Source: Macrostomum lignano (lineage: Eukaryota). From it: 19,635 nucleotides of DNA. Of the stretch, positions 1-19,536 are shown one piece after another; position 1 is the stretch's first letter; each line of letters opens with the position of its first letter. The stretch covers positions 1 through 19,635 of the forward strand of contig NIVC01005231.1 of assembly GCA_002269645.1 (NCBI GenBank), given 5' to 3'. The notes under the pieces are model-generated. The model did no database searches, was not told the DNA's origin, and worked only from the letters and a program-made list of their open reading frames with translations. The position numbers were made by a program, and so were the translations under genes.

Positions 1-295
1 ATCAATGTCACTCTATTGTATCAATGTCACTCTATCGACATCAATGTCACTCTATCGACAATGTCACTCTATCGTATCAATGTCACTCTATTGGTATCAA
101 TGTCACTCTATTGGTATCAATGTCACTCTATCGTATCAATGTCACTCTATCGGTATCAATGTCACTCTATCGATATCTCAATGTCACTCTATCGTATCAA
201 TGTCACTCTATCGGTATCAATGTCACTCTATCGGTATCAATGTCACTCTATTGGTATCAATGTCACTCTATCGGTATCAATGTCACTCTATAGTC
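1..295. repeat. Tandem minisatellite, 19-20 bp unit (GGTATCAATGTCACTCTATC), truncated by the window start
   Basis: CAATGTCACTCTAT recurs every 19-20 bp, about 15 times. The repetitive ORFs 5..586, 16..801 and 24..293 begin as translations of this repeat. Confidence 0.97.
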
Positions 296-334
296 AGCAA
301 TGTCAATCAACCCTCCCAATTCCTCCAAACCCAG

Positions 335-1297: not shown

Positions 1298-2065
1298 CTC
1301 AGCGGCAATCTCACTCAGCTGCTGTCGGCCTGTCGCCACGCCTGCCCAGCGCAGCCGACCTGGCCACCGTTGGCGCCTTCGGCCACCTCATCGCCCTGCT
1401 GATCGGCTGCTGCACCGCCGTGGTGCTGTTCACCGAGACCGGCCTGTGCGACAGCGGCCTGGAGCAGCGCCTGGCCAAGCCGGCTGGCCGTCACCTCAGC
1501 CTGGCTCTCATCGCGTCGCTGGCGCCGCCGCTGCACGGCCTGCTGGGCTGGCCGCTGCTGACAGGGGCCACCATCCGATCGCACACGCACGTCCGGGTGC
1601 TGACGCTGGCGGATCCGGCTAACCCGATTCCCGGCTGTCCGAGGCGCGTCCTTGGCGTGGCCGAGCAGCGGGTCAGCGGCCTGGCCGTGGGGCCCTGCTG
1701 GTGGCCTCGGTGCTGGCGGCCCGGCTGCTGCGCCTCATCCCGCTGGCCGCCATGGACGGCATGTTCCTCTGCATGGGCCTGGCCGCCCTGGCCGACCTGC
1801 AGCTGGCCGACCGGCTGTTCAACCTGCTGAAACTGAAGAAGAATCGCCAGCCGAAGCCCTACTTGGACGTGCCGAGCGCTGTGCTGCTGGCGTTCACGGC
1901 TCTGCAGCTGGCCCACGTGCTGCTGCTGCTCACGCTGAACTGCCTGGCCCAGTTTCTGCAGCTGGCCTACGCAGCCCTCGCCTTCCACTGGTCATTCTGG
2001 CCTTCGCCTTGCAGCGCCACCTGCTGCTACCGCGCTGGCGGCTCATCTCTAAACACCTGGCCAAG
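1298..2065 (+). CDS. SLC4-family exon, C-terminal half of the membrane domain, with 3 apparent -1 frameshifts (~1320, ~1691, ~1975)
   Basis: GHLIALLIGCCTAVVLFTETGL, GWPLLTGATIRSHTHVRVL (cf. ATTVRSVTHANAL), VLGVAEQRVSG (cf. VxEQRxSG), LLRLIPLAAMDGMFLCMGLAALADLQLADRL (cf. LxxIPLAVLFGIFLYMGVxSLxGIQLFDR), LAFTALQL and LPLVILAFALQRHLLLP. Acceptor cccgcag| ends at 1297; donor aag|gtaatt starts at 2066. Both are phase 0. Confidence 0.88.
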
Positions 2066-3269: not shown

Positions 3270-4127
3270 AGCAGCGACTGAGAGTGGGCACCAGAAGCGA
3301 GCCAATGGAGAGCGCAACGGGGAGCGGCGAGCTTCTCATTGAAGGAGCTGGTGAGAGCGCGCCCGGGGCAGAGATGTGCCACACCACTTGGGGGGGGGGG
3401 TCACCCGTGCAGATGACCACAGAGAAACCGCCGTTGGTGGTGCCCTCAGTGGCGGAGCCGTCGCAATAGATGCTGACGATGGCGGGGCGGGAGGAGGCAG
3501 AGCGGGTGTCAAGTGGTTCGCGCAACTATCGCTCCGGTGGCAAAGTGGCGAGCAGGTTGGAAGCGTGCCGCCTCTGGCCGAGCGGTGGTTGACCTGACCA
3601 GTCGCCATGTCGCTTGTGGTACAGAAAGAGCAAAGCAAAAACTGGCCTCGATGCGCAGCGCTTCAATCGGCGTTGAGCGATGATTCGGGAGCGGCGTTTT
3701 GCGAACGTTGGAGCTTCTCAAAAGTGGTGCCGTCTAGCCAAGGGTGACAGGCGGGGTCGGCGTACAGCATGATACTCCGTTGCATGGCGATAAAAGTGCG
3801 CTTGAGGGCGTCTTTCTGCCATTCCCAATCGCGCGCGGCGAGGCAGACCAGCATGCGATTGCGCGAATGCACCTTCCTGCAAACTCCTTCCGTGTGCGTG
3901 CTGAAGGTGAGGATCCGATCGTAAGTAAGGCCGAGCAGCCGCGGCGTGAGATTGCGCTTGAGTGGGGCTTGGCCGAGGCTAAGACGCGGGGACCATTTTG
4001 CCTTCACCGGGTAGATGGAGAAAAAGGCAGCCTCGCTCTTGGTAGGATTAAGGGCGAGCTTGCGGGAGGCGCACCACTCGGTCACGGCGTCGAGGCCAGC
4101 CTGGACCTCGGCTTCTGCGATCCGCTT
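3270..4127 (-). mobile_element. Degenerate, 5'-truncated non-LTR retrotransposon fragment (I/Ingi-like): RT C-terminus/thumb plus RNase H
   Basis: VQAGLDAVTEWCASRKLALNPTKSEAAFFS, PRLLGLTYDRILTF, LKRTFIAMQRSIMLYADPACHPWL...KLQRSQNAA, STPIEALRIEA, then RNase H IYCDGSATEGTTNGG. Several frameshifts and internal deletions. Confidence 0.85.
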
Positions 4128-5655
4128 CGCAGCCATATGGCGTGATTTCTTTTTGGTACACTCGAACTAAAACACTAACTCTAAGGGTCAGGAGGCACAC
4201 AAAATCCGCTCACTAAGAAGTGGGGCGACTACAAGATAAAACTAGAAGAGTGGGGAAATAAATGTACAGTGGAATGGACGGAGGGGCTAGCGTATGTACT
4301 TTGAGATAGAGCTAAACTATTCAAAGTCTATTGTACCCTTTGTAAGGGTTGCACAAATCAGAGTACATGTAATTCTCGTTGAGAGTACCTCATCACGGAA
4401 ATCTTTGTTAAAACGAGGTGCCGTAAAAACTTAGCGTAGATCAGTTCCGAAAAACTCCGCCGCACACTTAAACACTTGAAATTGGTGTTGCGTGCGTCCT
4501 ATGGGCTTGCGATCACGCTCTAGAGGGAATTGACAAGCAATGTTTTTGCTTCATTAGTACAATTTCTTGGAAGGGGTTTCACAAATCAGGGAACACTCTT
4601 TGAATTTGAATGTTCCTCTTCACGGAAATCGTTGTTAAAACGAGGTGCCGTAAAAACGGGTACATATCTGTTCGGAAGAACTCTGCCGCTGTATTATTGT
4701 TTTATTTAATCGAAAGAATTTAAATATTTACAGGTGATAAAAATAAGGAAATCTAAAAAATGCGTGCTGGATTTTTAAGAGCCTGTTAAAGGCAAAAAGA
4801 GGCTATTGAGTAAAAAATGAAATCAAACGCCAGAGCGCATGTTCAGATAAAATTTTATAGGTAGTATATCATTGGTATAAAAACAGCCAGGGGTATTTGT
4901 AAAAGCTGTCAAAGAATACAAATAGTTTGAATAAAGTAAATTTTCACAGGGAGATTACAGATCATACAAGGGTCCTATCATCCGATCTCTCTGGCTCAGG
5001 CAGCATAAATAGTCTTTTTAATGCATTTCAGCGCGTGCTCACTTCGGGTCTGGGAGACTGTCGACCAGCCTAACCTTGGATTAGGAATCCCCTGTTTCTT
5101 TCCCGAAGCCTTATGGCATCCTACAGAGCAGAGGGTCGCCTCTGAGATCTCGAAAGGCACGTCAGGTGTGACAAATGTGATGACTGGCTGCTGCTGGACT
5201 CTGTCGGGCCCTGTATGGGTTATCCAGCGGTCGGGCTCTGGATGGATGTTCAAGCAGCTTTTCCTCACGCAGCGCGCCGCCCAGGAAGACATTGTAGTCT
5301 TGCCCCGACGCCGGCAATACGAGGTAGGCCGGCTGATTCGCCATCTGCGCAGTGTTGACGCCGCGGCTTCACCAGCAAAAAATTTGCCTGTACGAGCAGC
5401 CAGACAATATAGGGCACCAGCTTGTTGGCCGCGACCTGTTACACTTTGAAAACCACCGGCGGGATGGCAGCCTGAGGCCTGCATTCGATTTAGATATTGA
5501 AAGAATATTGAAATAAAAGTTTAAATAAATAAAACTATTTTTCAATATTTGGAATTTCTTTGCATACATTTGGAGTTTGAAAAAGTAGACAAATACTGCA
5601 CACAGAAGGGGTCTGATAAAAATGAGGAAATCTAAACAAATACGTGCTGGATACA
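4128..5655 (-). mobile_element. Mosaic of diverged fragments of the AlkB-LINE family (5'UTR+ATG 4128-4406; mini unit 4407-4630; 3'UTR 4631-5150; ORF1 middle 5160-5484; 3'UTR piece 5485-5655)
   Basis: Clear block similarity: 4128-4406 to 6876-7170, 4631-5150 to 7171-7830, 5160-5484 to 11570-11880 (MANQPAYLVLPASGQDYNVFLGGALREEKLLEHP), and 5485-5655 to 7280-7450. Confidence 0.85.
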
Positions 5656-5663
5656 ATTGTATG

Positions 5664-6884
5664 AGTCTCGCGTCGCCTGCTGCCCCCGAGGCCTGTCATC
5701 GTCCTTGCCGCCTTGGTCGTCGCCGAAGGGACCACCGTTAAGCGGCTGGCTGTAGGTCGGGTCATCCGGCAGAGCCCGCTTGCGCCACAGCTCCGGCTTG
5801 GTGACGCGGAAGGTTAGCGAGATGCAAACACCATTCTGAGAGTGGGCGGCGGGCGCCTGGTGCTGCAGGCGCTTCTGGCAGTTTCCTGCCATCAGAATCA
5901 GCGAGCCTGGCAGCGTTGGAAAGCGGTGCGTCACGTTGCCGTCCCGACGGCGCAGCATAAACAGCCGCTCAGCGCCGAAGGACACGTTTGCGATCGTCGG
6001 CCCGTCGCCGAGCTCGTCCTCATCATCCGAGTGCCAGGGAATCCGGTCTCCCGGCTCGGTGTAGAAGTTCACCAACACGGAGTTGAACTTCGGGACATCG
6101 AACTGGGTATCATGGTAAATGAAGTCACGAATGTCTTCAATTACCTGATGCCAGTCTAGATTTTCCTTCAGCTCAACCCCGCTGTAGGTGTACGACGGGC
6201 CGATCCAGTAGACGCGGCGCTGCTCACTCGGACGATGCTGAAAGGCCAGAGGCAGCAGGTCGGTGATCAGGCGCTCGTAGACTTGGTCCGCGACCTCGCT
6301 CAGGAACTTGGGCGCATAGATGATGGTGCTGTCGCTGGCGTAGATCGTCTGCTGACAGTCAGTCAAGTCAGGCTCATCAGGGAAGATGATTTGACTGATG
6401 TCAGCGTCCAGTTGCTCGGCAGCGGCTTTGGCAGCGTCGAGGCCTGGTCTGCAACCGATTGCTGGCGCTCCTCAGACGTCGGCGCTGCCGCTGCCGCACT
6501 GAGCTCGCTGGACTCGGCAGTTGGTGGCTCGGTGGTTGCTGCGGCCTCGTTGGATGGCAGGGCGCTTGTCTGGCTTGGCTCGTCGCAGTCGAGAGACATG
6601 CGCTGCTCTGCCTCTGCGCCTGCAGCCTCCGGCAGCTGCTCATTCTCTCGCAGGATCTCCTCTGCGTTGCGCAAGAGCTCGCCGGCCGGTGGGCTGATCG
6701 AGTGGCGGCCTTCCAGACTGCGTCGAGCTCGCATCTGGCCTGCTGGCGGCGGGCTCGCGGTCGATGGCTCAGCTGTCGGCGTCAGTCCAAGAAGCTGGCG
6801 ACCGTAGGCTTCGTTCGGACGATACCGGTGCTCAAGAGAGGGCCGGCAGTCCATCTTTTTAGCGCTGGCGCGATTTGCAGCCAT
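5664..6884 (-). pseudogene. Truncated ORF1 copy with a complete AlkB-like domain (~5800-6330); 1-bp frameshift at ~6423; first 2OG-binding Arg changed to Cys
   Basis: ORFs 6363..6884 and 5632..6366 are the two frames of the same protein as 13347-12080. The motif reads WHSDDE...LQHQ...CISLTFR, versus RISLTFR in the full-length copy. Confidence 0.85.
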
Positions 6885-7170
6885 ATGGCGTGATTATTTG
6901 GGTGCACTCACACTAAACTAAACTAGACAACTACTAATGAGTCAGGAGGCACACAAAGTGCGCTCGCTGAGAGGGGTGGGGCGACTGCAAGATAAGACTA
7001 GGGGTGGGGTAGAGATAAAAACAAATGTACAGTGGAATGGAAGGCTAACTAAAGTACTTTAAGAGCTAAGCTAGGCTAGTCTAAACTATTCAACTTCTAA
7101 TAAGCCTTTCTAGGAAAGGCCTGCAAAAACTAGAGAATTCTCCTAAGAGTATCCCTCCACGGAAATCTTT
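5664..7170 (-). mobile_element. Second, 3'-truncated tandem copy of the AlkB-LINE (5'UTR plus N-terminal half of ORF1)
   Basis: Colinear with 12080-13634. About 98-99% identical over most of 6030-7170 and more diverged below 6030. Confidence 0.93.
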
Positions 7171-7225
7171 GTTGTTGTTAAAACGAGGTGCCGTCGAAAC
7201 CGGCGCGGGTCAGTTCCGAAGAACT
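7171..7225 (-). other. LINE 3' terminus: AGUUC-UUCG-GAACU stem-loop (7225-7212) followed by an (AAC)3 tail (7179-7171)
   Basis: Perfect 5-bp stem closing a cUUCGg loop, ~32 nt before the tail. Variants occur at ~4443-4456 and ~4669-4682. Confidence 0.65.
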
Positions 7226-7812
7226 CTGCCGCAGTTATATTTTGTATTTGATCGAAAGAATTAAAAATATTTACAAGATTTCGATTTGAATATTTAATAC
7301 GAATATTGAAATTAAAAATATACATATATAAAACTATTTTTCAATATTTTGCAGAATTTTGCACGCATTTGGGGATAAAAAAGAGGGGAGGGAATCCCAC
7401 ACAAAGAAGGGATCTAATAAAAACAGGACATCTAAAAAATACGTGCTAGATATTTGAAGGCCTATTGAGAATAAAAGCAAGACATTTAAGTAAAAAATAG
7501 AGATTAAAAATGCAATAGCGCATATTTGAATTTAGTTGTAAAAATAGAATGAATATAGTAAAGGTGTAAAAAAGCAATTAGTGATATTTGTAGAGCAGTT
7601 GGGTAAAAAACACAGTTGGGAAAATTGTAAAAAGAAACGCGAGGAGACATAGAGATTACCTAATCAGTCCTAATGACTGATCAACCGATCTCTGTCTCAG
7701 GCAGCAAGTTTAGTTTTATTAGTTGCGTTTCAGAGCGTGGTCACTTCCGGTTTGGAAGGCTGGTAGCCAGCCTAACCCTGGGGTGGGATTCCCCTGTTTC
7801 TTTCCCGACGCC

Positions 7813-10547
7813 TCATGGCATCCCAGAGGACATTGAGGACGGGGTTCGGCCCGGAGCCCGAGGGGCTTCCGGCTCAATGTGGAAGCTGTGGAGCTTGGCT
7901 GCCCTCATCTTGAGCAGCCAAGCCACCCCCAGCTGCTTGACTCTGTCTGCGAGCATCGGCATACCTGCCAGCTTGTGCAGGTATTCAATGCTGATGTAGG
8001 ATGGCACACCATAGCAGATACGGAGAGCCAGGTTTTGAATTTTTGCAATTTGATTTGGTTAGTCGCACAAATTTGGCTCAGGATTGGCGCTCCATAGGTG
8101 AGAGCGCTTTCTCCGTATGCCCTGTACAGCATTCTGAGGGTGGTGCTACTCAGCTTAGTCATTTTTGCAATTCTGCACAGTGACATTACAATGGCTCTGC
8201 TGGTATCTGCCATGTTGTCCACATGTTTGTTCAGGCAGAGGCTCTGGTCAAGGAGGACACCCAGGAATTTCACCTCCTGACAGTACGGAACCTCAGTGTC
8301 CCCCAGATACAGTTTGGGTCGCAAGTCCATGCGCCTAGTGGGTTTGTAGTTGAAAGCGATTGCTTTGCTTTTCCCGGCATTCAGTCTAATGCCCTGTTTA
8401 CCGCACCAGTCAAAGACTCGTCTGAGGTAGCTTTGAAGGGATGTTCGGAGCCCCGCAAAGGTGTCTGCTGAGGCCCAGACGGCCATGTCGTCTGCGAATT
8501 GACTGCGTTTGACGCTTGAGATGGTGGGAGTCGGCATTGAGCTGACGAAGAGGAGGTACAGGAGAGGGCTCAGAATGCCTCCCTGAGGGACGCCAGCCTG
8601 GATGGTGTGGGGATCGCTTAGGGCCCCCTCGATTCGAACCTGGATCTGTCTGTCTCGCAGGTAGTCAGACAGGATTCGCATGAGCATAGGTGGAAAACCA
8701 TCAGTGAGCATGCTATGCCTGATCTTGTCGTGCCAGGTGGAGTCAAAAGCTGCCTCTGCATCCAGGAAGACTGCAGCGGACTTTTTAGCTTTGCACTTTG
8801 CTACCATGACATCTTGTGCCAGACGGCACAGGTTGTCATACGTGGAGTGAATTTTGCGGTAGGCGCATTGGTCATCTCCTAGGGTCTTATTATCCTCAAG
8901 GTGCTTGGTGAGTCTTTTTGCTATAAGCTTCTCAAACACTTTGCCCAGACATGAGGTCAGGCTGATTGGTCTGTAGGAGTTGGGGTGTTCGGGCGGTTTG
9001 TCCGGCTTGGGGATCATTGTCACCACAGCTTTCTTCCAGGCGCTGGGGAAAATCCCTCGACCGTAGCAGGCGTTGAAGAGGTTAGTGAGTCTCGTGATTG
9101 CCACCCCCTCTAAGCCCAGCTTGAGGACGCAGTTGGGAATCTTGTCCAGCCCGGGTGCTCCATCAGGCCTGAGGTGCTCCAGTTCCCACACTGTGTCTGC
9201 CACAGAGAATGCAGCATCAAGTGGGTGGGTCTCGAATGGGTTCGATTCCCTCAGGAACGGGGTAGAATGAGGTGAGCTGTGCCACATCGGCCACCTCACG
9301 TTTGAGCTGTTCGCATGTGGAAGGGACTGGGCGCATCTTTGAGTCCAGAGTCTCGGCTAGAAGGTTAGCCTTCTCCAGATCTGTGTGCGCAGTTGTTTGA
9401 CCCAGGGTGAGGCTGGGGATGGAGGTTGGCTTAAATTTGCCCAGCAGCTTTTTAGTGTCGTGCCAGAAATTCTTCACTTTCTTGTTCTTGCTATTTTCAA
9501 CAATACTCTCACAGACTTTGGTGAGCTTTCCATTCTGGAAGGCGCTAATTTCTCTCTTTATGCGATTTGCGAGCTGGTTTGCTTGGGTTTTGAAATTTTG
9601 ATCCCGTGTGCTGAAGAAGAGGCGTCTGAGTCGTCTGCGCTCTTTGATCAGGTCGAGGATGTACTTGGGTAGGGCGTTTTTGGCACCACAGTCTGGTACT
9701 GTGGAGTCAATCACGGTGTGAATGGCCTTTGTGATGTGATCCACTTCGGCATTGATTTGGTCAGCATTTGATAATTTAATATTCTGATCTGAGCTCAAAG
9801 CTTCACTGATTTTGAGTCTGAACTCGTCCCAGTTTGTTTTTGAGAAGTTTTTGGGTCTGGGGGGACCAGCCCATTTCTTCGACTGAATATTGAGCGTGAG
9901 GATTATAGGTAAGTGGTCACTGCCCAGGTCAGGACCCACCTCAAAGTCCTGCACAAATGGGAGAAAGTCCTCAGTGGCCAGGGCGAGGTCCAAGACATTC
10001 CTAGAAATCAGCCCGTTTTTGGTGGCCAGTCTGGTGAACTGACCGGCCTGATTGAGAATGGTGGGCGAGTGGGGCCCTCAGACAGCCAGTCGTGCAGCTG
10101 GTAGCCAGCCATGTTGTTGCTGCTGTCACCCCCGAGGAAGCGGTGTCTGGCATTGAGGTCACCCATGAGCACACTGCGCCTACGGAGAGAAGATTTTTGA
10201 GTAGGTTCAGGTTCAGATGGTACGGTGCTGGAGACCTGTACACCAGAGCGAGATTGAAGTCAGGACCAGAGTTGTCAGACAAGCTCACGGTGCAAGAGAT
10301 GGCTTCATGGTTGACATTGTCATACTGCAAGCGCACATTTGTGAGTTTGACGCGAGGAGAGTGGCAAGGAGAAGCCCGCGTTTGACTTGCGGGGTATCAT
10401 ACCGAATGATGGAGTACCCGGGAATCTGGACAGTGTGACAACTTTTGAGAATGGTCTCAGAAAGAGGGCAATGTCTAGCTCCTGACTGACGACCCACTGT
10501 GTCAGCTCTCTGATTTTCGGGTTGAATCCCCTGCAGTTTAAATGCAT
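7813..10547 (-). CDS. LINE ORF2: APE endonuclease (~10547-9890) plus reverse transcriptase (~9170-8270) and thumb; 6 frame breaks; no RNase H seen
   Basis: APE motifs: HLNCRG, LFSET, GYSIIRYD, VYRSP, MGDLNARH, LDLAL, GSDHLPI. RT motifs: APGLDKIPN, SYRPISLTSCLGKVFEKLI, FLDAEAAFD, GVPQGGILSPLLY, QFADD, FLGVLLD. Breaks near 10460, 10350, 10180, 10065, 9250 and 8040. Confidence 0.93.
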
Positions 10548-10640
10548 AATCTTCAGGGCTGTGGTTTGATTGTTTGAGTCTACAGTTAACGCACTGAAGT
10601 TTCAATTCAAGTCTTGAGTTTAGCTGCCTGAGACTAGGAC

Positions 10641-13347
10641 TCAGTGGTCATGCCCGGCACTTCCTGCCATGCCCGGCACTTCCTGGAGTGCAGCCCGCAC
10701 AATGTCCTCAACCATTTTACTGGTTGATTCCACAGTGAGGACCTCCCCAGGCGGTCGGGACAGGGCCTGCACAACCACTTGAGTCAGAGAGCGGGTGATC
10801 AGGGGCAACAGCATGCTCACCACCGACATAAAGTCACTAAGCTGCAGCTGCACCGCCTGGCCGGCATCAGCTGACGGAGCAGTCGCATTGACATCAGACT
10901 CGGTCTCTGCCGCCGGAGCGCTCCTGGCATCATCGGTCACGATGACAAGCGGCCGGATCGCGGCGGGTACCGGCACCGTGCGCCTGCCTCGGCGGATCAG
11001 CCAGCCGCTGTCGGAGTCGTCGTCGGCGGCGGCGTCGTCGGTCTCACTTGACACTGGGGCAGCAGCGGCCGCAGCTTCCGCAGCTCGCGCCGCGGCTTTG
11101 GCCTCAGCAGCCGCTCTGGTCGCCTTGTCGTGCTCCGCCTTGGCGACGGTGCAGGCTCGACTGGTGGTTCGGTGCGAGCCGCCGCAGTTGGCGCAGACCG
11201 CTGGGCCCTCGTGCTGGCACTCCTTCCAGGAATGCTGGCCGCCGCAAATCCGGCAGCGCTGCTGCCCCCGACACTGGGCAGCGCGGTGGCCGAACTCCTG
11301 GCAGCGCTGGCATTGCAGAGCGCGGACCGGCTCGTCTGTGCGGCTGTCCTCGCAGTTGAACTTCAAGAAGTCGGTGCAGATGCCATCGCGGAGGCACTTC
11401 TCGTAGGTCATCGCCGACTTTGTGAAGATGCGCACGAACTGGGTTGCCTTCCCAGTCGCTCTGGCTCGGATTCTGTGGACGCTGACAATGTCCAGCTTGA
11501 GCGTGCGCGCAACAGGGTCGCGAAGTCAGCCTCCGAGAATGCGAGGGGCACCTCAGTAGCGACGAAGGTGCGTACCGGCTGCTGCTGCACTCTGTCGGGC
11601 CCTGTTCTGTTGTCCAGCGGTCGGGCTCGGGCTGGACGGCGCTTTACGGGATGCTCGAGCAGCTTCTCCTCGCGCAGCGCGCCGCCCAGGAAGACGTTGT
11701 AGTCCCGCTCCGACGCTGGGAACACGAGATAGGCCGGCTGATTCGCCATCGGCGCAGTGTTGACGGCTCTAGCTTCGCCGGCAAAGTTGGTCTGCAGCCA
11801 GGCAACGAACTGCATCAGCTTGTTGGCCGCGTCCCGGTGCACCTCAAAAACGATCGGCGGGATGGCAGCCTGGGGCCTTCTGGGCGGCGCAGGGCGCGCC
11901 GCAACCTGCGCGTAGGGCCGCGCTGCCGCAGCCGCCTGCGCGCTTGTCGCCGAAGCCGCCGCCGCACCGGCCGGCCAGGAAGCCGCCGAAGCCGCCGCCG
12001 CACCGGACGCCGCGCCGCGACCTCCTCGCCTGCCTCGCTGGTGGCCGCCACGGCCGCGCCGACCCCGATCGCCTTCGCGGTCTCGCGTCGCCGTCGCCTG
12101 CCGCTCCTGGGGCCTGTCGTCGCCCCGGCCGCCCTGGTCGTCGTCGTGGCCGCCTTGGTCGTCGTCCCGACCGCCTTGGTCGTCGCCGAATGGGCCGCCG
12201 TTTAGCGGCTGGCTGTAGGTCGGGTCATCCGGCAGAGCTCGCTTGCGCCGCAGCTCCGGCTTGGTGACACGGAATGTTAGCGAGATGCGGACGCCATTCT
12301 GAGAGTGGGCGGCGGGCACCTGGTGCTGCAGGCGTTTCTGGCAGTTTCCTGCCATCAGAATCAGCGAGCCTGGCAGCGTTGGAAAGCGGTGCGTCACGTT
12401 GCCGTCCCGACGGCGCAGCATGAACAGCCGCTCAGCGCCGAAGGACACGGTCGCGATCGTCGGCCTGTCGCCGAGCTCATCCTCATCGTCCGAGTGCCAG
12501 GGAATCCGGTCTCCCGGCTCGGTGTAGAAGTTCACCAACACGGAGTTGAACTTCGGGACATCGAACTGGGTATCATGGTAAATGAAGTCACGAATGTCTT
12601 CAATTACCTGATGCCAGTTAGATTTTCCTTCAGCTCAACCCCGCTGTAGGTGTACGACGGGCCGATCCAGTAGACGCGGCGCTGCTCACTCGGACGATGC
12701 TGAAAGGCTTGAGGCAGCAGGTCGGTGATCAGGCGCTCGTAGACTTGGTCCGCGACCTCGCTCAGGAACTTGGGCGCATAGATGATGGTGCTGTCGCTAG
12801 CGTAGATCGTCTGCTGACAGTCAGTCAAGTCAGGCTCATCAGGGAAGATGATTTGACTGATGTCAGCGTCCAGTTGCTCGGCAGGGGGCTTTGGCAGCGT
12901 CGAGGCCTGGTCTGCAGCCGATTGCTGGCGCTCCTCAGACGTCGGCGCTGCCGCTGCCGCACTGAGCTCGCTGGACTCGGCAGTTGGTGGCTCGGTGGTT
13001 GCTGCGGCCTCGTTGGATGGCAGGGCGCTTGTCTGGCCTGGCTCGTCGCAGTCGAGAGACATGCGCTGCTCTGCCTCTGCGCCTGCAGCCTCCGGCAGCT
13101 GCTCATTCTCTCGCAGGATCTCCTCTGCGTTGCGCAAGAGCTCGCCGGCCGGTGGGCTGATCGAGTGGCGGCCTTCCAGACTGCGTCGAGCTCGCATCAG
13201 GCCTGCTGGCGGCGGGCTCGCAGTCGATGGCTCAGCTGTCGGCGTCAGTCCAAGAAGCTGGCGACCGTAGGCTTCGTTCGGACGATACCGGTGCTCGAGA
13301 GAGGGCCGGCAGTCCATCTTTTTAGCGCTGGCGCGATTTGCAGCCAT
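10641..13347 (-). CDS. LINE ORF1 (~902 aa after restoring 1 nt each at ~12618 and ~11500): low-complexity N-terminus, AlkB domain, DDQGG/RGG/Ala linker, gag-like region, 3 CCHC knuckles
   Basis: Joined from ORFs 12604..13347, 11408..12541 and 10641..11435. The base missing at 12618 is present in the second copy (GAAAATCTAGACTGG). The span of 2707 nt plus 2 gives 903 codons. Confidence 0.87.
11151..11312 (-). other. Three CCHC zinc knuckles of ORF1
   Basis: CQRCQEFGHRAAQC, CRICGGQHSWKEC and CANCGGSHRTTSRAC (CX2CX4HX4C, CX2CX3HX4C, CX2CX3HX6C), the spacing typical of Jockey/I-group ORF1. Confidence 0.95.
12262..12790 (-). other. AlkB-family 2OG-Fe(II) dioxygenase domain (ALKBH2/ALKBH3-like) inside ORF1
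   Basis: YTYSG, FNSVLVNFY, WHSDDEDELG (HxD at 12496-12488), IATVSFGAERLF, GSLILMAG, LQHQVP (His at 12325-12323) and RISLTFR (12289-12269). Confidence 0.93.
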
Positions 13348-13824
13348 ATGGCGTGATTATTTGGGTACACTCAAACTAAACCTAAACTACAACTAACTAA
13401 TGAGTCAGGAGGCACACAAAGTGCGCTCGCTGAGAGGGGTGGGGCGACTGCAAGATAAGACTAGGGGTGGGGTAGAGATAAAAACAAATGTACAGTGGAA
13501 TGGAAGGCTAACTAAAGTACTTTCAAGAGCTAAGCTAGGCTAGTCTAAACTATTCAACTTCCAATAAGCCTTTCTAGGAAAGGCCTGCAAAAACTAGAGA
13601 ATTCTCCTAAGAGTATCCCTCCACGGAAATCTTTAGTAAAAGGCGAAAGATTTAATCGTGGAATGAAGAGAAACCAGAGTTGAAGTTAAACAAGTCTGGG
13701 TAGCTTTTTTTGTAGAAAATTCTGTAACCGCTTTAATTAAACATTCGTTTTCATAAAGCATTCGTTCCTGGAATGCCAATCTCTCTACTGACATAAGTGG
13801 AACTATTTGCGCATGAAAGTTAGT

Positions 13825-14764
13825 TTTTGTCTACGCAGTTTTTTTCTATGCTGTAGAGAGTGGGAGGATAGGCAGTAAAATTTCGGTAATTTTTTTAAAA
13901 CTTCATAGTAAGTCTTTTCTGAAGTAGCCACTGGTTAGCGAGGGTGATGACCTCTTCTTTGGACTCGAAGCGGTGCCACGGAGTGGCCACTTGAGCTGAC
14001 GGAATAGATGAAAATCGGAGGGTGCCAGGTCTGGTGAATAGGCCGGATGTGGGAGGATTTCGAACCCCGCAGTGGTGGCAGCATTCACCGCAACCTGGGC
14101 AGTGTGAGCTGAGGCATTGTCGTGAAGCAGCAAGGGGGCCAGCACTCAGCTTCCCCCGCTTCTTCTGGACCACTGCCTGACGAAACCGGCCCAGCTGTTC
14201 GGAGGACCAGACACCTGTGACAGTGTGCCTAACAGACAGGTACTCGGCGAGCAGGATCCCCTGAAAGTCCAGAAGAAACAGCCCTGGAATCTCGCTTAGA
14301 CACGGGGGTCCATAGTGGCAGATCCAGCACTCATCCCCAGTAATGATTCATCGCTCAAATCCATCCAGGTTCTCATTGTAGAGGTCAGGCAGTAGTCCCG
14401 ACGAGAAAGCATTCGGGGCGCTACTGCCTCAACTTTTATGGCTCACCCTGCCACGCTTGAATTCGTTGTAAAGTCGCTCGATGGTGCGCAGAGAGGGACA
14501 AGTTGTGGGGTACAGACTTTATCTTCTCCTCAATTGCAAAATTTAATATGAGGGCTCGGTATTTCTGCTTGTGTGTGCATTTTGCGGAAAATTCAGGGGG
14601 TGCTTAAAGTTCGTGCAGAAAAGATACAGTTAAAAAGACATGAAAAGAAAACACTGCACCCTATAAATTCTATATAAAAGTACTTTAAAAAGCCGAAAAA
14701 AATATTAAAAAAAAGCTTTTGAAATGGCTGAACGGCAAAACTATAGATTTGAACCACCCTCGTA
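13825..14764 (-). mobile_element. Degenerate mariner (DD34D) DNA transposon with one TIR
   Basis: RTIERLYNEFKRGR (HTH), IITGDECWICHYDP, LLLHDNASAH and HPAYSPDLAPSDFHLF. The 5' end on the - strand reads TA-CGAGGGTGGTTCAAA (14764-14748), a mariner-like TIR with a TA target dinucleotide. Stops, frameshifts and deletions are present. Confidence 0.88.
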
Positions 14765-15284: not shown

Positions 15285-16001
15285 AGAGAGACAGAATTGC
15301 AGAGAGACAGAATTGCAGAGAGACAGAATTGCAGAGAGACAGAATTGCAGAGAGACAGAATTGCAGACAGACAGAATTGCAGAGACAGAATTGCAGAGAG
15401 ACAGAATCGCAGACAGACAGAATTGCAGACAGATAGAATTGCAGAAATACAGAGTTGCAGACAGACAGAATTGCAGGCAGACAGAATCGCAGACAGATAG
15501 AATTGCAGAAATACAGAGTTGCAGACGGACAGAATCGCAGACAGACAGACTTGCAGACAGATAGAATTGCAGAAATACAGAGTTGCAGACAGACAGAATT
15601 GCAGACAGACAGAATTGCAGACATACAGAATTGCAGACAGACAGAATTGCAGACAGACAGAATTGCAGGCAGACAGAATCGCAGGCAGACAGAATTGCAG
15701 GCAGACAGAATCGCAGGCAGACAGAATTGCAGACAGACAGAATCGCAGGCAGACAGAATTGCAGACAGACAGAATTGCAGACAGACAGAATTGCAGACAG
15801 ACAGAATCTCAGGCAGACAGAATTGCAGACATACAGAATTGCAGACAGAAAAAATTGCAGACAGACAGAATTGCAGACATACAGAATTGCAGACAGACAG
15901 AATCGCAGGCAAACAGAATCGCAGACAGAAGCAGACAGGCGGCACAGAAGCAGACAGGCGGCACAGAAGCAGACAGGCGGCACAGAAGCAGACAGGCGGC
16001 A
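15285..16001. repeat. 16-bp minisatellite (AGACAGACAGAATTGC variants), ending in four 19-bp units (CAGAAGCAGACAGGCGGCA, 15926-16001)
   Basis: Period read directly from the sequence. It accounts for all the repetitive ORFs at 15255-16326. Confidence 0.97.
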
Positions 16002-16519: not shown

Positions 16520-16920
16520 CAGCATCTGACACGGATGACACTTACAGCATCTGACACAGATGGACACTTACAGCATCTGACACAGATGGACACTTACAGC
16601 ATCTGACACAGATGGACACTTACAGCATCTGACAAAGATAGACACTTACAGCATCTGACAAAGATAGACACTTACAGCATCTGACACAGATGGACACTTA
16701 CAGCATCTGACACAGATAGACACTTACATCATCTGACACAGATGGACACTTACAGCATCTGACACAGATATGACACTTACAGCATCTGACACTGATAGAC
16801 ACTTACAGCATCGGACACAGATGGACACTTACAGCATCTGACAAAGATGGACGCTTACAGCATGACAAAGATGACACTTACAGCATCTGACACAGATAGA
16901 CACTTACAGCATCTGACACA
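16520..16920. repeat. 26-bp minisatellite (GACACTTACAGCATCTGACACAGATG), ~15 copies
   Basis: CTTACAGC recurs at 16541, 16567 and onward with period 26, with a few shortened units. Confidence 0.97.
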
Positions 16921-17194
16921 AATGGTTTTCGTAGCGCTTTGATACAGTTTGACATGAATTGGGAATATTTGAGCATCGGATATGTACCGTTTTAAAAAGC
17001 GCTTTGTTTCATTTCATTTGTTTAATGCTATTAAGTACCGATATAGCCATCAAATTTTCCTTTTTGGCTTGTATTATTTTGTGCCAACTTTTCAAAAAGG
17101 ATGAAGTCTGAATCTTACTACTGTCAGTAGGTAAAAAGTTATATATAAACATATACTCGTAAATAAACAAATTAACTACTCGTATATACCACAG

Positions 17195-18327: not shown

Positions 18328-19536
18328 AACTCCAGCTCCCCAACTCCAGCTCCCCAACTCCAGCTCCCCAACTCCAGCTCCCCAACTCCAGTTGCCCAAC
18401 TCCAGTTCCCCAACTCCAGCTCCCCAACTCCAATTCCCCAACTCCAGCTCCCCAACTCCAGTTCCCCAACTCCAGCTCCCCAACTCCAATTCCCCAACTC
18501 CAGTTCCCCAACTCCAGTTCCCCAACTCCAACTCCCCAACTCCAGCTCCCCAACTCCAGCTCCCCAACTCCAACTCCCCAACTCCAGCTCCCCAACTCCA
18601 ATTCCCCAACTCCAGCTCCCCAACTCCAATTCCCCAACTCCAGCTCCCCAACTCCAATTCCCCAACTCCGATTCCCCAACTCCAGCTAACCAACTCCAGT
18701 TCCCCAACTCCAGCTCCCCAACTCCAGCTCCCCAACTCCAACTCCCCAACTCCAGCTAACCAACTCCGATTCCCCAACTCCAGCTAACCAACTCCAATTC
18801 CCCAACTCCAGTTCCCCAACTCCAGCTCCCCAACTCCAGTTCCCCAACTCCAGCTCCCCAACTCCAGTTGCCCAACTCCAGTTCCCAACTCCAGCTCCCC
18901 AACTCCAATTCCCCAACTCCAGCTCCCCAACTCCAGTTCCCCAACTCCAGCTCCCCAACTCCAATTCCCCAACTCCAGTTCCCCAACTCCAGTTCCCCAA
19001 CTCCAACTCCCCAACTCCAGCTCCCCAACTCCAGCTCCCAACTCCAACTCCCCAACTCCAGCTCCCCAACTCCAATTCCCCAACTCCAGCTCCCAACTCC
19101 AATTCCCCAACTCCAGCTCCCCAACTCCAATTCCCCAACTCCGATTCCCCAACTCCAGCTAACCAACTCCAGTTCCCCAACTCCAGCTCCCCAACTCCAG
19201 CTCCCCAACTCCAACTCCCCAACTCCAGCTAACCAACTCCGATTCCCCAACTCCAGCTAACCAACTCCAACTCCCCAACTCCAGCTCCCAACTCCAATTC
19301 CCCAACTCCGATTCCCCAACTCCAGCTAACCAACTCCAATTCCCCAACTCCGATTCCCCAACTCCAGCTCCCCAACTCCAATTCCCCAACTCCGATTCCC
19401 CAACTCCAGCTAACCAACTCCAATTCCCCAACTCCGATTCCCCAACTCCAGCTAACCAACTCCAATTCCCAACTCCAATCCCCAACTCAAATTCCCAACT
19501 CCAATTCCCCAACTCCAACTCCCCAACTCCAACTCC
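18328..19536. repeat. 14-bp strand-asymmetric satellite (CCCCAACTCCAGCT; - strand AGCTGGAGTTGGGG), ~85 units
   Basis: TCCAGC recurs at 18331, 18345 and 18359. The variable 4-mer is agct, agtt, aatt, aact or gatt. It accounts for the W/G/E-rich ORFs at 18220-19569. Confidence 0.97.

What the first reader, a model, noticed from the sequence alone, without database searches (positions are those of the whole stretch)
10641..13347. LINE ORF1 carrying an intact AlkB-type oxidative demethylase fused to a gag-like nucleocapsid
Seen: one reconstructed ORF links an ALKBH2/3-like domain (HxD, distal His, RxxxxxR) to RGG repeats and three CCHC knuckles, directly upstream of APE-RT. The domain is present in two tandem units. 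Established: ALKBH2/3 and E. coli AlkB remove m1A/m3C; these lesions block Watson-Crick pairing and impede reverse transcription; some plant RNA viruses (e.g. Flexiviridae, Closteroviridae) carry AlkB in their replicase; typical Jockey/I ORF1 proteins lack such an enzyme. Inference: an ORF1p that coats its own RNA would deliver a demethylase in cis, repairing or erasing methyl marks on the template or cDNA, possibly as counter-defence. I cannot confirm whether this fusion is already catalogued.
Basis: partly seen in the sequence, partly recalled or inferred. Interest (0 to 1): 0.9.

Follow-up and report, generated by a model that had tools for sequence, protein, structure and literature searches.

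The report
Flatworm LINE whose ORF1 carries AlkB
A jumping gene (LINE) of the flatworm Macrostomum lignano has an AlkB-type demethylase of the kind that repairs methylated DNA and RNA bases built into its RNA-coating protein, and several distantly related elements keep the same fusion intact, which suggests that the element cleans its own template.

Summary
Confirmed, with corrections. The feature lies on the minus strand of a Macrostomum lignano window.

**ORF1 layout (13347-10641).** It reads: disordered N-terminus, ALKBH2/3-type AlkB domain, DDQGG/RGG linker, two RRM-like domains, three zinc knuckles, C-tail. ORF2 (APE+RT) follows 93 nt downstream.

**State of the window copies.**
- ORF1 is split by two 1-nt deletions, at about 12619 and 11507.
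- ORF2 carries six frameshifts.
- The second unit (7170-5695) keeps only the leader, the N-terminus and AlkB.

**Sister copies** in assembly GCA_002269645.1:
- One has AlkB through the knuckles in a single 731-codon open frame.
- Another has an intact 926-aa ORF2.

**Other families.** At least five diverged families (35-43% AlkB identity) encode intact 757-962 aa ORF1s with the same architecture. One sits in a complete element.

**Evidence for a working enzyme.**
- The iron and 2-oxoglutarate ligands are invariant.
- Between two families whose synonymous sites are saturated, AlkB is as constrained as the RNA-binding domains.

AlkB is therefore a selected part of this LINE lineage. Cis repair of m1A/m3C-type lesions on element RNA or cDNA is the most likely role, but it is untested. 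I found no published LINE-ORF1 AlkB. The closest precedents are the orchid Gypsy ALKBH5-like ORF and the plant-virus AlkB domains.

**Side finding.** The array starts inside a U5 snRNA gene.

The parts
7171..13634 (-). LINE unit 'copy 1', full length (6464 nt): leader, ORF1, ORF2, 3'UTR, (AAC)3 tail
   Evidence: Self-BLAST repeat boundary and junction sequences. About 99% identical to three tandem units in L008.
13348..13634 (-). 5' leader. Its first 68 nt (13634-13567) are nt 49-117 of a U5 snRNA.
   Evidence: Rfam U5 hit at 13682-13567 spans the unit boundary. Alignment of the junctions.
10641..13347 (-). ORF1 (about 903 aa after repair of two 1-nt deletions near 12619 and 11507)
   Evidence: Single-frame versions exist in L001 and L008.
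12254..12792 (-). AlkB (ALKBH2/3-type Fe(II)/2OG dioxygenase) domain. NxY lies within 12550-12524, HxD at 12496-12488, distal His within 12331-12314, RxxxxxR at 12289-12269.
   Evidence: Pfam. PDB sequence search, best hit ALKBH3 at 1e-21. AF2 model plus Foldseek against ALKBH3/ALKBH2. Coordinates.
12014..12187 (-). Low-complexity linker: DDQGG repeats (12187-12116) and RGG box (12073-12014). Specific to this family.
   Evidence: TRF 21-nt repeat, translation. Other families have Q-rich or other linkers.
11612..11863 (-). First RRM-like domain ('mid' domain, IPPIVFEV...KRRPARARPLD)
   Evidence: Conserved block in six families. AF2 model of a homologue gives a beta-alpha-beta-beta-alpha-beta fold. 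Foldseek hits tandem-RRM proteins.
11340..11572 (-). Second RRM-like domain, interrupted in this copy by the 1-nt deletion at about 11507
   Evidence: In frame in L001 copy A and L008 unit 3.
11151..11312 (-). Three zinc knuckles: CX2CX4HX4C, CX2CX3HX4C, CX2CX3HX6C
   Evidence: Translation. The first knuckle matches Pfam zf-CCHC only below its curated cutoff (E 0.007, 16.9 bits against a cutoff of 20.8). The profile of the family matches retroviral NC-type knuckles in the PDB only weakly, at E about 1e-3.
7775..10547 (-). ORF2 (APE + RT), degraded here by six 1-nt frameshifts. YxDD box at 8501-8475.
   Evidence: RVT_1 4e-37. tblastn with the intact L001 ORF2. Indel list. The intact 926-aa version hits Exo_endo_phos_2 and RVT_1.
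7171..7774 (-). 3' UTR, AT-rich, with terminal hairpins and an (AAC)3 tail at 7179-7171
   Evidence: Sequence.
5695..7170 (-). LINE unit 'copy 2': U5(49-117) head, 5'UTR, N-terminus and single-frame AlkB domain, then broken off
   Evidence: 97.2% identity to 13634-12158. Translation, differences.
13567..13682 (-). U5 spliceosomal snRNA gene, complete, overlapping the start of copy 1
   Evidence: Rfam RF00020, 83.7 bits (gathering score 40), model positions 1-117. The same gene is in L001 and L008.

Best explanation
This is a non-LTR retrotransposon (LINE; APE+RT ORF2) of Macrostomum lignano. Its ORF1 protein is a natural fusion: a disordered N-terminus, an ALKBH2/3-type Fe(II)/2-oxoglutarate dioxygenase, a low-complexity (RGG) linker, two RRM-like domains, three CCHC knuckles and a C-terminal tail.

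Shown:
- The fusion is real.
- It is in one frame in sister copies.
- It is shared by several deeply diverged LINE families with intact ORFs.
- It has been kept under purifying selection with all metal and 2OG ligands intact.

Inferred:
- ORF1p binds the RNA that encoded it, the cis preference usual for LINE ORF1 proteins.
- It thereby brings a demethylase to the element's own RNP.
- There the enzyme oxidatively removes N1-methyladenine/N3-methylcytosine-type methyl groups from single-stranded RNA template and/or nascent cDNA. These lesions or marks block base pairing and stall reverse transcriptase.
- This raises the yield of full-length, correct copies.
For: Architecture and frames:
- (window).
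- (L001 copy A: N-terminus plus AlkB in one ORF, RRMs plus CCHC in one ORF, ORF2 926 aa intact).
- (L008 unit 3: AlkB through CCHC in one 731-codon frame).

Other families:
- The closest of 1.84 billion representative proteins are long proteins with the same layout.
- L002 is a complete element: ORF1 of 843 aa and ORF2 of 948 aa with APE+RT.
- Three more families come from M. lignano itself, or probably so (for P0047, assigned only from its UniParc identifier range).

Enzyme class:
- Pfam 2OG-FeII_Oxy_2.
- PDB sequence search: ALKBH3 1e-21, ALKBH2 5e-15.
- AF2 core pLDDT mostly above 90.
- Foldseek: ALKBH3 9e-18 and ALKBH2 1e-15, TM 0.75-0.81. ALKBH5, FTO and E. coli AlkB are far weaker.

Catalytic residues:
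- N..Y, HxD, H and RxxxxxR are invariant in six families and in 56 AlkB homologues.

Constraint:
- P0051 versus P0049: AlkB pN 0.25 against pS 0.81 (saturated). The first RRM is 0.22, CCHC 0.19, the second RRM 0.30, and linkers 0.41-0.44.
- AlkB identity between families (35-43%) tracks ORF2 (40%) and exceeds the RRMs. This points to co-divergence with the element.

RNA-binding half:
- Tandem RRM-like folds. The knuckles match retroviral NC-type knuckles only weakly.

Analogy (established knowledge, not tested here):
- ALKBH3 repairs m1A/m3C in ssDNA and RNA.
- AlkB domains of plant Flexiviridae replicases repair RNA.
Against: - No biochemical or expression data exist. The substrate and the cis action are inference.
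- Every copy in this window is broken, and copy 2 has lost one 2OG-binding Arg.
- The nucleotide-recognition hairpin (W..x..FGK..PR) found in bacterial and ALKBH2/3 enzymes is shortened in the retroelement versions. Substrate preference may therefore differ from ALKBH2/3.
- In human L1, m6A promotes retrotransposition and ALKBH5 suppresses it (PMC7873242, listed). Demethylation is therefore not automatically pro-element.
- The organism behind the intact Logan contigs is unknown.
Confidence: 0.55

Rival explanations
1. Epitranscriptomic eraser or counter-defence. The domain removes host-deposited regulatory marks (m6A, regulatory m1A) from the element's RNA. This would let the RNA escape reader-mediated decay, silencing or sequestration. 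The role would not be repair of chemical damage.
For: - Precedent: an orchid Ty3/Gypsy lineage encodes an ALKBH5-like protein with in vitro m6A demethylase activity (PMC9289625).
- The domain is conserved across families, as expected for a function in host-element conflict.
Against: - Sequence and fold place it with ALKBH3/ALKBH2, not ALKBH5/FTO.
- In mammals m6A helps L1 (PMC7873242).
- Nothing is known here about m6A or m1A pathways in Macrostomum.
Confidence: 0.2
2. The enzyme acts on something other than the element's own nucleic acid. Candidates are host tRNA or mRNA (as ALKBH3 does on tRNA m1A/m3C), which would boost translation, or the DNA target site and nearby chromatin during integration.
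For: - ALKBH3-type fold.
- The fusion to general RNA-binding modules (RGG, RRM, CCHC) does not by itself impose specificity for the element RNA.
Against: - LINE ORF1 proteins generally act in cis on their own RNA (established knowledge).
- An effect in trans would benefit competitors equally, so it is harder to keep under selection inside an element.
Confidence: 0.12
3. Non-catalytic passenger. The AlkB fold serves only as a nucleic-acid-binding or oligomerisation module, or it is a captured gene fragment on its way to decay.
For: - All four copies of the window's own family carry at least one frameshift in ORF1.
- Copy 2 has R-to-C in the 2OG site.
Against: - Iron and 2OG ligands are invariant over families only 35-43% identical.
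- pN is well below pS.
- Intact ORF1s exist in five families.
- Several frameshifts sit at sites that are polymorphic between units. This pattern looks like a consensus artefact of assembling near-identical repeats.
Confidence: 0.06
4. Artefact. The AlkB and gag-like parts belong to different genes joined by misassembly or by the reader's frame repair.
For: The window needs two frame repairs.
Against: - The same junctions occur in an independent assembly.
- They also occur in independently assembled contigs from at least eight sequencing runs.
- Uninterrupted ORFs of 757-962 aa exist.
Confidence: 0.02

Closest known systems
Orchid (Phalaenopsis) Ty3/Gypsy elements encoding an ALKBH5-like m6A demethylase (PMC9289625)
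   Same: A retrotransposon that has acquired an AlkB-family dioxygenase with conserved HxD...H and Arg ligands. The proposed role is in handling methylation of the element's RNA.
   Different: - That element is an LTR element; this one is a LINE.
- There the enzyme is a separate extra ORF. Here it is fused in frame to the RNA-binding ORF1p.
- That enzyme is in the ALKBH5 (m6A) subfamily, this one in ALKBH2/3.
- That acquisition was recent and within a single plant genus. This one is shared by families as diverged as 35-43% identity.
AlkB domains in replicase polyproteins of plant RNA viruses (Flexiviridae, Closteroviridae)
   Same: An AlkB domain embedded in the replication machinery of an RNA-templated genetic element. 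RNA repair of m1A/m3C is the accepted role (established knowledge).
   Different: - Viral matches are structurally weaker (15-28% identity, Foldseek E 1e-16 to 1e-10) than human ALKBH3/2 (30-34%).
- In the viruses the domain sits in the replicase. Here it sits in the nucleic-acid-coating protein.
- No specific relationship was seen.
Human ALKBH3 and ALKBH2 (m1A/m3C oxidative demethylases)
   Same: Best sequence and structure matches. All iron and 2OG ligands and the NxY motif are present.
   Different: - About 30-34% identity.
- Lacks the ALKBH3 insertion between the core strands.
- Has a shortened lid hairpin without the FGK finger.
- Fused to RRMs and knuckles.
- Host M. lignano ALKBH-like genes (P0054, P0057) are not its nearest relatives.
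LINE ORF1 proteins with RRM plus CCHC knuckles ('type I' ORF1p; Jockey, I factor and relatives)
   Same: The C-terminal half has RRM-like domains followed by three knuckles with spacing CX2CX4HX4C / CX2CX3HX4C / CX2CX3HX6C. ORF2 has APE+RT and no RNase H.
   Different: - Those proteins have no enzymatic domain, as far as I know.
- The known accessory enzyme in LINE ORF1s is the esterase of CR1/L2-like elements, not a dioxygenase.
- Clade membership by RT phylogeny was not tested.
snRNA-gene-targeting LINEs (Utopia/Keno in U2, PMC4640811; Tx1 families listed with a U5 target in PMC4494074)
   Same: The array begins inside a U5 snRNA gene. Each 3' tail abuts U5 at nt 49, or nt 52 in the third, diverged junction.
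   Different: - Those are R2/NeSL-type or L1/Tx1-type elements.
- This element has I/Jockey-group-like RT motifs.
- Target specificity here rests on one locus only.

Membership tests
AlkB family Fe(II)/2-oxoglutarate dioxygenases, ALKBH2/3 subgroup | Double-stranded beta-helix fold of AlkB type | tested here: met
   AF2 model core pLDDT mostly above 90. Foldseek: ALKBH3 9e-18 and ALKBH2 1e-15, target TM 0.75-0.81.
AlkB family Fe(II)/2-oxoglutarate dioxygenases, ALKBH2/3 subgroup | HxD...H iron triad and RxxxxxR plus NxY 2OG-binding residues | tested here: met
   Invariant in six retroelement families and in 56 homologues. Window coordinates. Window copy 2 alone has R-to-C.
AlkB family Fe(II)/2-oxoglutarate dioxygenases, ALKBH2/3 subgroup | Closer to ALKBH2/3 than to ALKBH5, FTO, ALKBH1/4/6/7/8 | tested here: met
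   PDB sequence search returns only ALKBH3 and ALKBH2. Foldseek ranks ALKBH6, ALKBH8, FTO and ALKBH5 at 1e-10 or weaker.
AlkB family Fe(II)/2-oxoglutarate dioxygenases, ALKBH2/3 subgroup | Nucleotide-recognition lid hairpin (W...FGK..PR) as in bacterial AlkB and ALKBH2/3 | tested here: not met
   In alignment A2 the retroelement protein has gaps across this hairpin and no FGK. This may mean a different substrate grip.
AlkB family Fe(II)/2-oxoglutarate dioxygenases, ALKBH2/3 subgroup | Oxidative demethylation activity on m1A/m3C | not testable with these tools
   Needs biochemistry.
APE-type non-LTR retrotransposon (LINE) | ORF2 with apurinic-like endonuclease followed by reverse transcriptase | tested here: met
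   Exo_endo_phos_2 2e-11 and RVT_1 1.6e-36 on the intact 926-aa ORF2 of L001. The same holds in L002.
APE-type non-LTR retrotransposon (LINE) | Multiple copies, no LTRs, simple 3' tail | tested here: met
   Two units in the window and at least three in L008. (AAC)n tail. Classical target-site duplications could not be defined.
Type I LINE ORF1p (RRM + CCHC) | RRM fold(s) followed by CCHC knuckles | tested here: met
   AF2 model of the P0043 C-half shows two beta-alpha-beta-beta-alpha-beta domains. Foldseek top hits are tandem-RRM proteins at E about 3e-5 with low TM. Knuckles. The model is of a 36%-identical homologue, not of the window protein.
Jockey / I clades specifically | Placement by RT-domain phylogeny with reference elements | not tested
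   No reference set (Repbase/Dfam) was available. The only hints are motif-level (YRPISL..K..EK...RL, no RNase H, Exo_endo_phos_2 scoring above Exo_endo_phos).
Target-specific (U5 snRNA gene) LINE | Independent insertions at the same nucleotide of the target gene | tested here: inconclusive
   Three tail|U5 junctions at nt 49 to 52, two of them in different subfamilies, but all in one array. The same locus appears in a second assembly. Logan families show no U5.

The most novel reading that the evidence does not exclude
A retroelement-specific clade of ALKBH2/3-like dioxygenases was acquired once. It has since travelled with, and perhaps between, retroelements of flatworm-like hosts. It is fused to the RNA-coating ORF1p of a whole LINE lineage, and it also sits in the upstream ORF of a probable Penelope-like element (L013). 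Under this reading, self-delivered nucleic-acid demethylation is a recurrent and previously unrecognised retrotransposon strategy. In the window's family it is combined with insertion into U5 snRNA genes in a way that rebuilds the U5 gene upstream of each new copy.
Probability: 0.4. Interest if true: 0.85.

Novelty: new variant of a known kind. Interest (0 to 1): 0.72.

Why it matters
LINE ORF1 proteins are thought of as chaperones and coats. The only accessory enzyme I know of in them is an esterase.

A conserved, apparently active AlkB fused to ORF1p would mean that base methylation of the RNA template or cDNA limits retrotransposition enough for an element to carry its own eraser. Plant RNA viruses and one orchid LTR element reached this solution independently.

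The finding offers a tractable test of whether m1A/m3C (or other marks) restrict reverse transcription in vivo, because M. lignano has transgenesis (PMC5730564).

It also flags a set of 'Fe2OG dioxygenase domain-containing proteins' in public flatworm proteomes that are in fact transposon proteins.

Tried and rejected
1. **Intron reading of the first frame break.** A GT...AG pair spaced 42 nt apart lies at 12607-12566. I rejected it because 42 nt does not change the frame, the AlkB alignment runs straight through, and copy 2 and L001 differ by one G.
2. **Homology search with the whole 903-aa reconstruction**. It returned 8000 candidates and no hits, probably because low-complexity words swamped the candidate list (my inference).
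3. **Profile search with conserved blocks of six ORF1s**. It returned only about 200-aa bacterial AlkBs. It found no AlkB-less ORF1 relatives and did not even return the query families, so it says nothing about taxonomic spread.
4. **NJ tree of 89 AlkB domains.** timed out. In one search the backbone was unresolved: the retroelement clade without the window had 47% support, and the window paired with the host-like P0054 at 26%. I relied instead on reciprocal phmmer ranks, where every retroelement AlkB has the others as its top hits and P0054 shows no special affinity.
5. **Recent capture of a host ALKBH gene.** Not supported.
7. **Organism of the Logan runs** (SRR31628392-437, SRR19430222). 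It could not be identified. There were no papers, no nucleotide similarity to M. lignano loci and no named cluster members.
8. **Small ORF between ORF1 and ORF2 in L002 and L006.** Not conserved.
9. **Within-family syn/nonsyn counts**. Unusable after the frame tie.
Full report
**Observation**

The window is from Macrostomum lignano. A 381-aa NCBI protein (BOX15_Mlig027759g7) is 100% identical to the query. Its contig NIVC01002892.1 (GCA_002269645.1) carries a 98.6-99.3% identical locus.

The feature is on the minus strand. From the ATG at 13347, three overlapping reading frames (13347-12604, 12541-11408, 11435-10641) together spell one protein. The frame changes are single-base deletions near 12619 and 11507. 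This follows from the second unit in the window and from four sister units.

Pfam finds 2OG-FeII_Oxy_2 at three levels:
- 1.7e-16 on the raw ORF;
- 3e-21 on the repaired protein;
- 1.3e-19 on the uninterrupted copy-2 frame.

- HxD at 12496-12488;
- the distal His within 12331-12314;
- RxxxxxR at 12289-12269;
- the RGG box at 12073-12014;
- three knuckles at 11312-11151.

ORF2 starts 93 nt downstream, at 10547.

**Copies**

The window holds one full unit (13634-7171) and the 5' 1.5 kb of a second (7170-5695, 97.2% identity).

Copy 2 has AlkB in one frame. It also has its own upstream deletion and an R-to-C change in the 2OG site, and it breaks off after AlkB. Window ORF2 has six 1-nt frameshifts.

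In the other assembly the same U5-proximal locus has at least three full units:
- Unit 1 has N-terminus plus AlkB in one ORF, both RRMs plus the knuckles in one ORF, and an intact 926-aa ORF2 with Exo_endo_phos_2 and RVT_1.
- Unit 3 has AlkB, linker, both RRMs, knuckles and tail in one 731-codon open frame.

Every junction of the reconstruction is therefore seen in frame in real DNA. Several of the 1-nt gaps fall exactly where the units differ by a substitution. That pattern is what I would expect from consensus errors in near-identical repeats, so some 'frameshifts' may not be biological.

**Beyond this family**

An exhaustive HMMER scan of 1.84 billion representatives with the copy-2 AlkB frame gave long proteins as the best non-self hits. 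Five of these clusters have the same order of parts: AlkB, linker, RRM-like, RRM-like, three knuckles, conserved C-tail.
- P0041 (962 aa), P0043 (757), P0049 (892) and P0051 (843) are uninterrupted ORFs on contigs assembled from at least eight sequencing runs of an unidentified organism.
- P0046/P0190 (with fragments P0042 and P0044) is from M. lignano itself, and the fragment P0047 probably is too.
- L002 is a complete element: an 843-aa ORF1 and a 948-aa APE+RT ORF2 that is 40% identical to the window family's ORF2.

**The enzyme**

Against the PDB, only ALKBH3 (1e-21) and ALKBH2 (5e-15) match by sequence. An AF2 model built with 55 homologues has a confident core. It superposes best on ALKBH3 (9e-18) and ALKBH2 (1e-15), with target TM 0.75-0.81. 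ALKBH6, ALKBH8, FTO, ALKBH5 and E. coli AlkB follow far behind. Viral AlkBs are weaker still, at 15-28% identity.

The NxY, HxD, H and RxxxxxR residues are invariant in six families.

One difference stands out. The lid hairpin carrying the FGK finger of bacterial and ALKBH2-type enzymes is largely missing. I read this as a hint of single-strand substrates, but that is inference.

**Selection and origin**

Between P0051 and P0049, synonymous sites are saturated (pS 0.7-0.8). Nonsynonymous divergence (pN) by region is:

| Region | pN |
|---|---|
| AlkB | 0.25 |
| First RRM | 0.22 |
| Knuckles | 0.19 |
| Second RRM | 0.30 |
| Linkers and tails | 0.41-0.44 |

Across families, AlkB identity (35-43%) equals that of ORF2 and exceeds that of the RRMs. 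This suggests the domain has diverged along with the element.

A crude NJ tree is unresolved. By reciprocal phmmer ranking, however, every retroelement AlkB has the other retroelement AlkBs as its top hits. The host-like M. lignano proteins P0054 (C2H2 plus AlkB) and P0057 (ALKBH3-like) are no closer than bacterial AlkBs. A single, old acquisition is the simplest reading. The donor is unknown.

**Mechanism**

Shown: a conserved, apparently catalytically competent ALKBH2/3-type domain is covalently tied to the RNA-binding part of ORF1p.

Inferred: ORF1p loads on its own RNA and demethylates m1A/m3C-type lesions or marks on template RNA or cDNA that would stall the RT.

Rivals:
- erasure of regulatory marks such as m6A, with the precedent of the orchid Gypsy ALKBH5-like protein (PMC9289625);
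- action on host RNAs or on target DNA;
- a non-catalytic passenger.

The fold argues against an m6A-specific enzyme. The invariant ligands argue against a passenger.

**Known or new**

Four full-text searches found no report of an AlkB domain in a non-LTR or Penelope-like element. The proteins sit in UniProt as 'Fe2OG dioxygenase domain-containing protein'.

AlkB in a retrotransposon (orchid Gypsy) and in RNA-virus replicases is known. I therefore rate this a new variant of a known kind: a different element class, a different AlkB subfamily, an in-frame fusion to ORF1p, and old. Repbase and Dfam could not be checked.

**Side findings**

1. *U5 snRNA gene.* A complete U5 snRNA gene (83.7 bits) lies at 13682-13567 and spans the start of unit 1. 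The unit begins in U5 loop I (...CGCCUUUUACU|AAAGAUUUCC), and the (AAC)3 tail of unit 1 abuts U5 nt 49 again at the start of unit 2. A diverged element further on has the same kind of junction, at 4630. This fits a U5-gene-specific LINE in which each insertion rebuilds U5 upstream, so that arrays grow at one site. Unequal crossing-over is an alternative. Tx1 families with a U5 target are listed in PMC4494074.
2. *Probable Penelope-like element.* In another sample (L013), a related AlkB (P0191) sits in a 1012-aa ORF upstream of an ORF with weak RVT_1 and GIY-YIG matches and LPKIHK-type motifs.

**Limits**

- There is no activity, expression or RT phylogeny.
- The organism of the intact contigs is unknown.
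- The RRM model is of a homologue, not of the window protein.
- Target specificity rests on one locus.

Noticed in passing
window 13682-13567 (-), with junctions at 13635/13634, 7171/7170 and about 4631/4630: A complete U5 snRNA gene (Rfam, 83.7 bits) spans the 5' boundary of LINE copy 1. Each unit starts at U5 nt 49 in loop I, and each (AAC)n tail abuts U5 nt 49 (nt 52 in the third, diverged junction). This suggests a U5-gene-targeting LINE whose insertion rebuilds U5 upstream, and it could explain the tandem array. The other assembly has at least three full units at the same locus (L008).
   Followed up: partly
L013 2120-5158 and 5266-7398 (Logan SRR19430222): A 1012-aa ORF with a related AlkB domain (Pfam 5e-31) and no knuckles lies upstream of an ORF with weak RVT_1 and GIY-YIG matches and LPKIHK/YIDD motifs. 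This is probably a Penelope-like element carrying the same kind of AlkB.
   Followed up: partly
window 12619, 11507, 10462, 10365, 10185, 10070, 9236, 8044; L008 units: The frameshifts are almost all 1-nt gaps. Several fall at positions where sister units differ by a substitution, which looks like consensus error in near-identical tandem repeats. The real copies may be intact.
   Followed up: partly
window 4123-5653 (-): Beyond copy 2 lies a patchwork of an older, 71-79% similar relative: a mid-ORF1 fragment (5480-5122), the ORF2 end and 3'UTR (5128-4977, 5653-5484), its tail and a further U5-like head plus 5'UTR (4630-4123). In this array the older copies lie further from the U5 gene.
   Followed up: partly
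window 1420-1830 (+): An ORF matches the HCO3- transporter membrane domain (Pfam PF00955, 5e-10). This is probably an exon of an SLC4-like host gene next to the LINE array.
   Followed up: no
window 1-305, 863-1136, 15285-16001, 16520-16925, 18328-19536: Five satellite or microsatellite arrays: 20-nt, GA-rich, 16-nt plus 19-nt, 26-nt and 14-nt units. The 16-nt and 26-nt arrays are also found upstream of the U5 gene in the other assembly.
   Followed up: no
window 13903-14145 (-): A short ORF reads like the C-terminal part of a mariner/Tc1 transposase (HDNA..H, PYSPDLAPSDFHLF). Pfam gave no hit at E<0.01, so this rests on motif resemblance only.
   Followed up: no
window about 10666 (-): A private 10-nt insertion (a short duplication) changes the last residues of ORF1 in the window copy (..MAGSAGHDH*) relative to the sister copies (..MAGMTTES*).
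   Followed up: no
P0054, P0057/P0320 (M. lignano proteins): Two host-like AlkB genes were seen: one with N-terminal C2H2 fingers and a Gly-rich insertion, and one ALKBH3-like. Neither is the closest relative of the retroelement AlkBs.
   Followed up: partly
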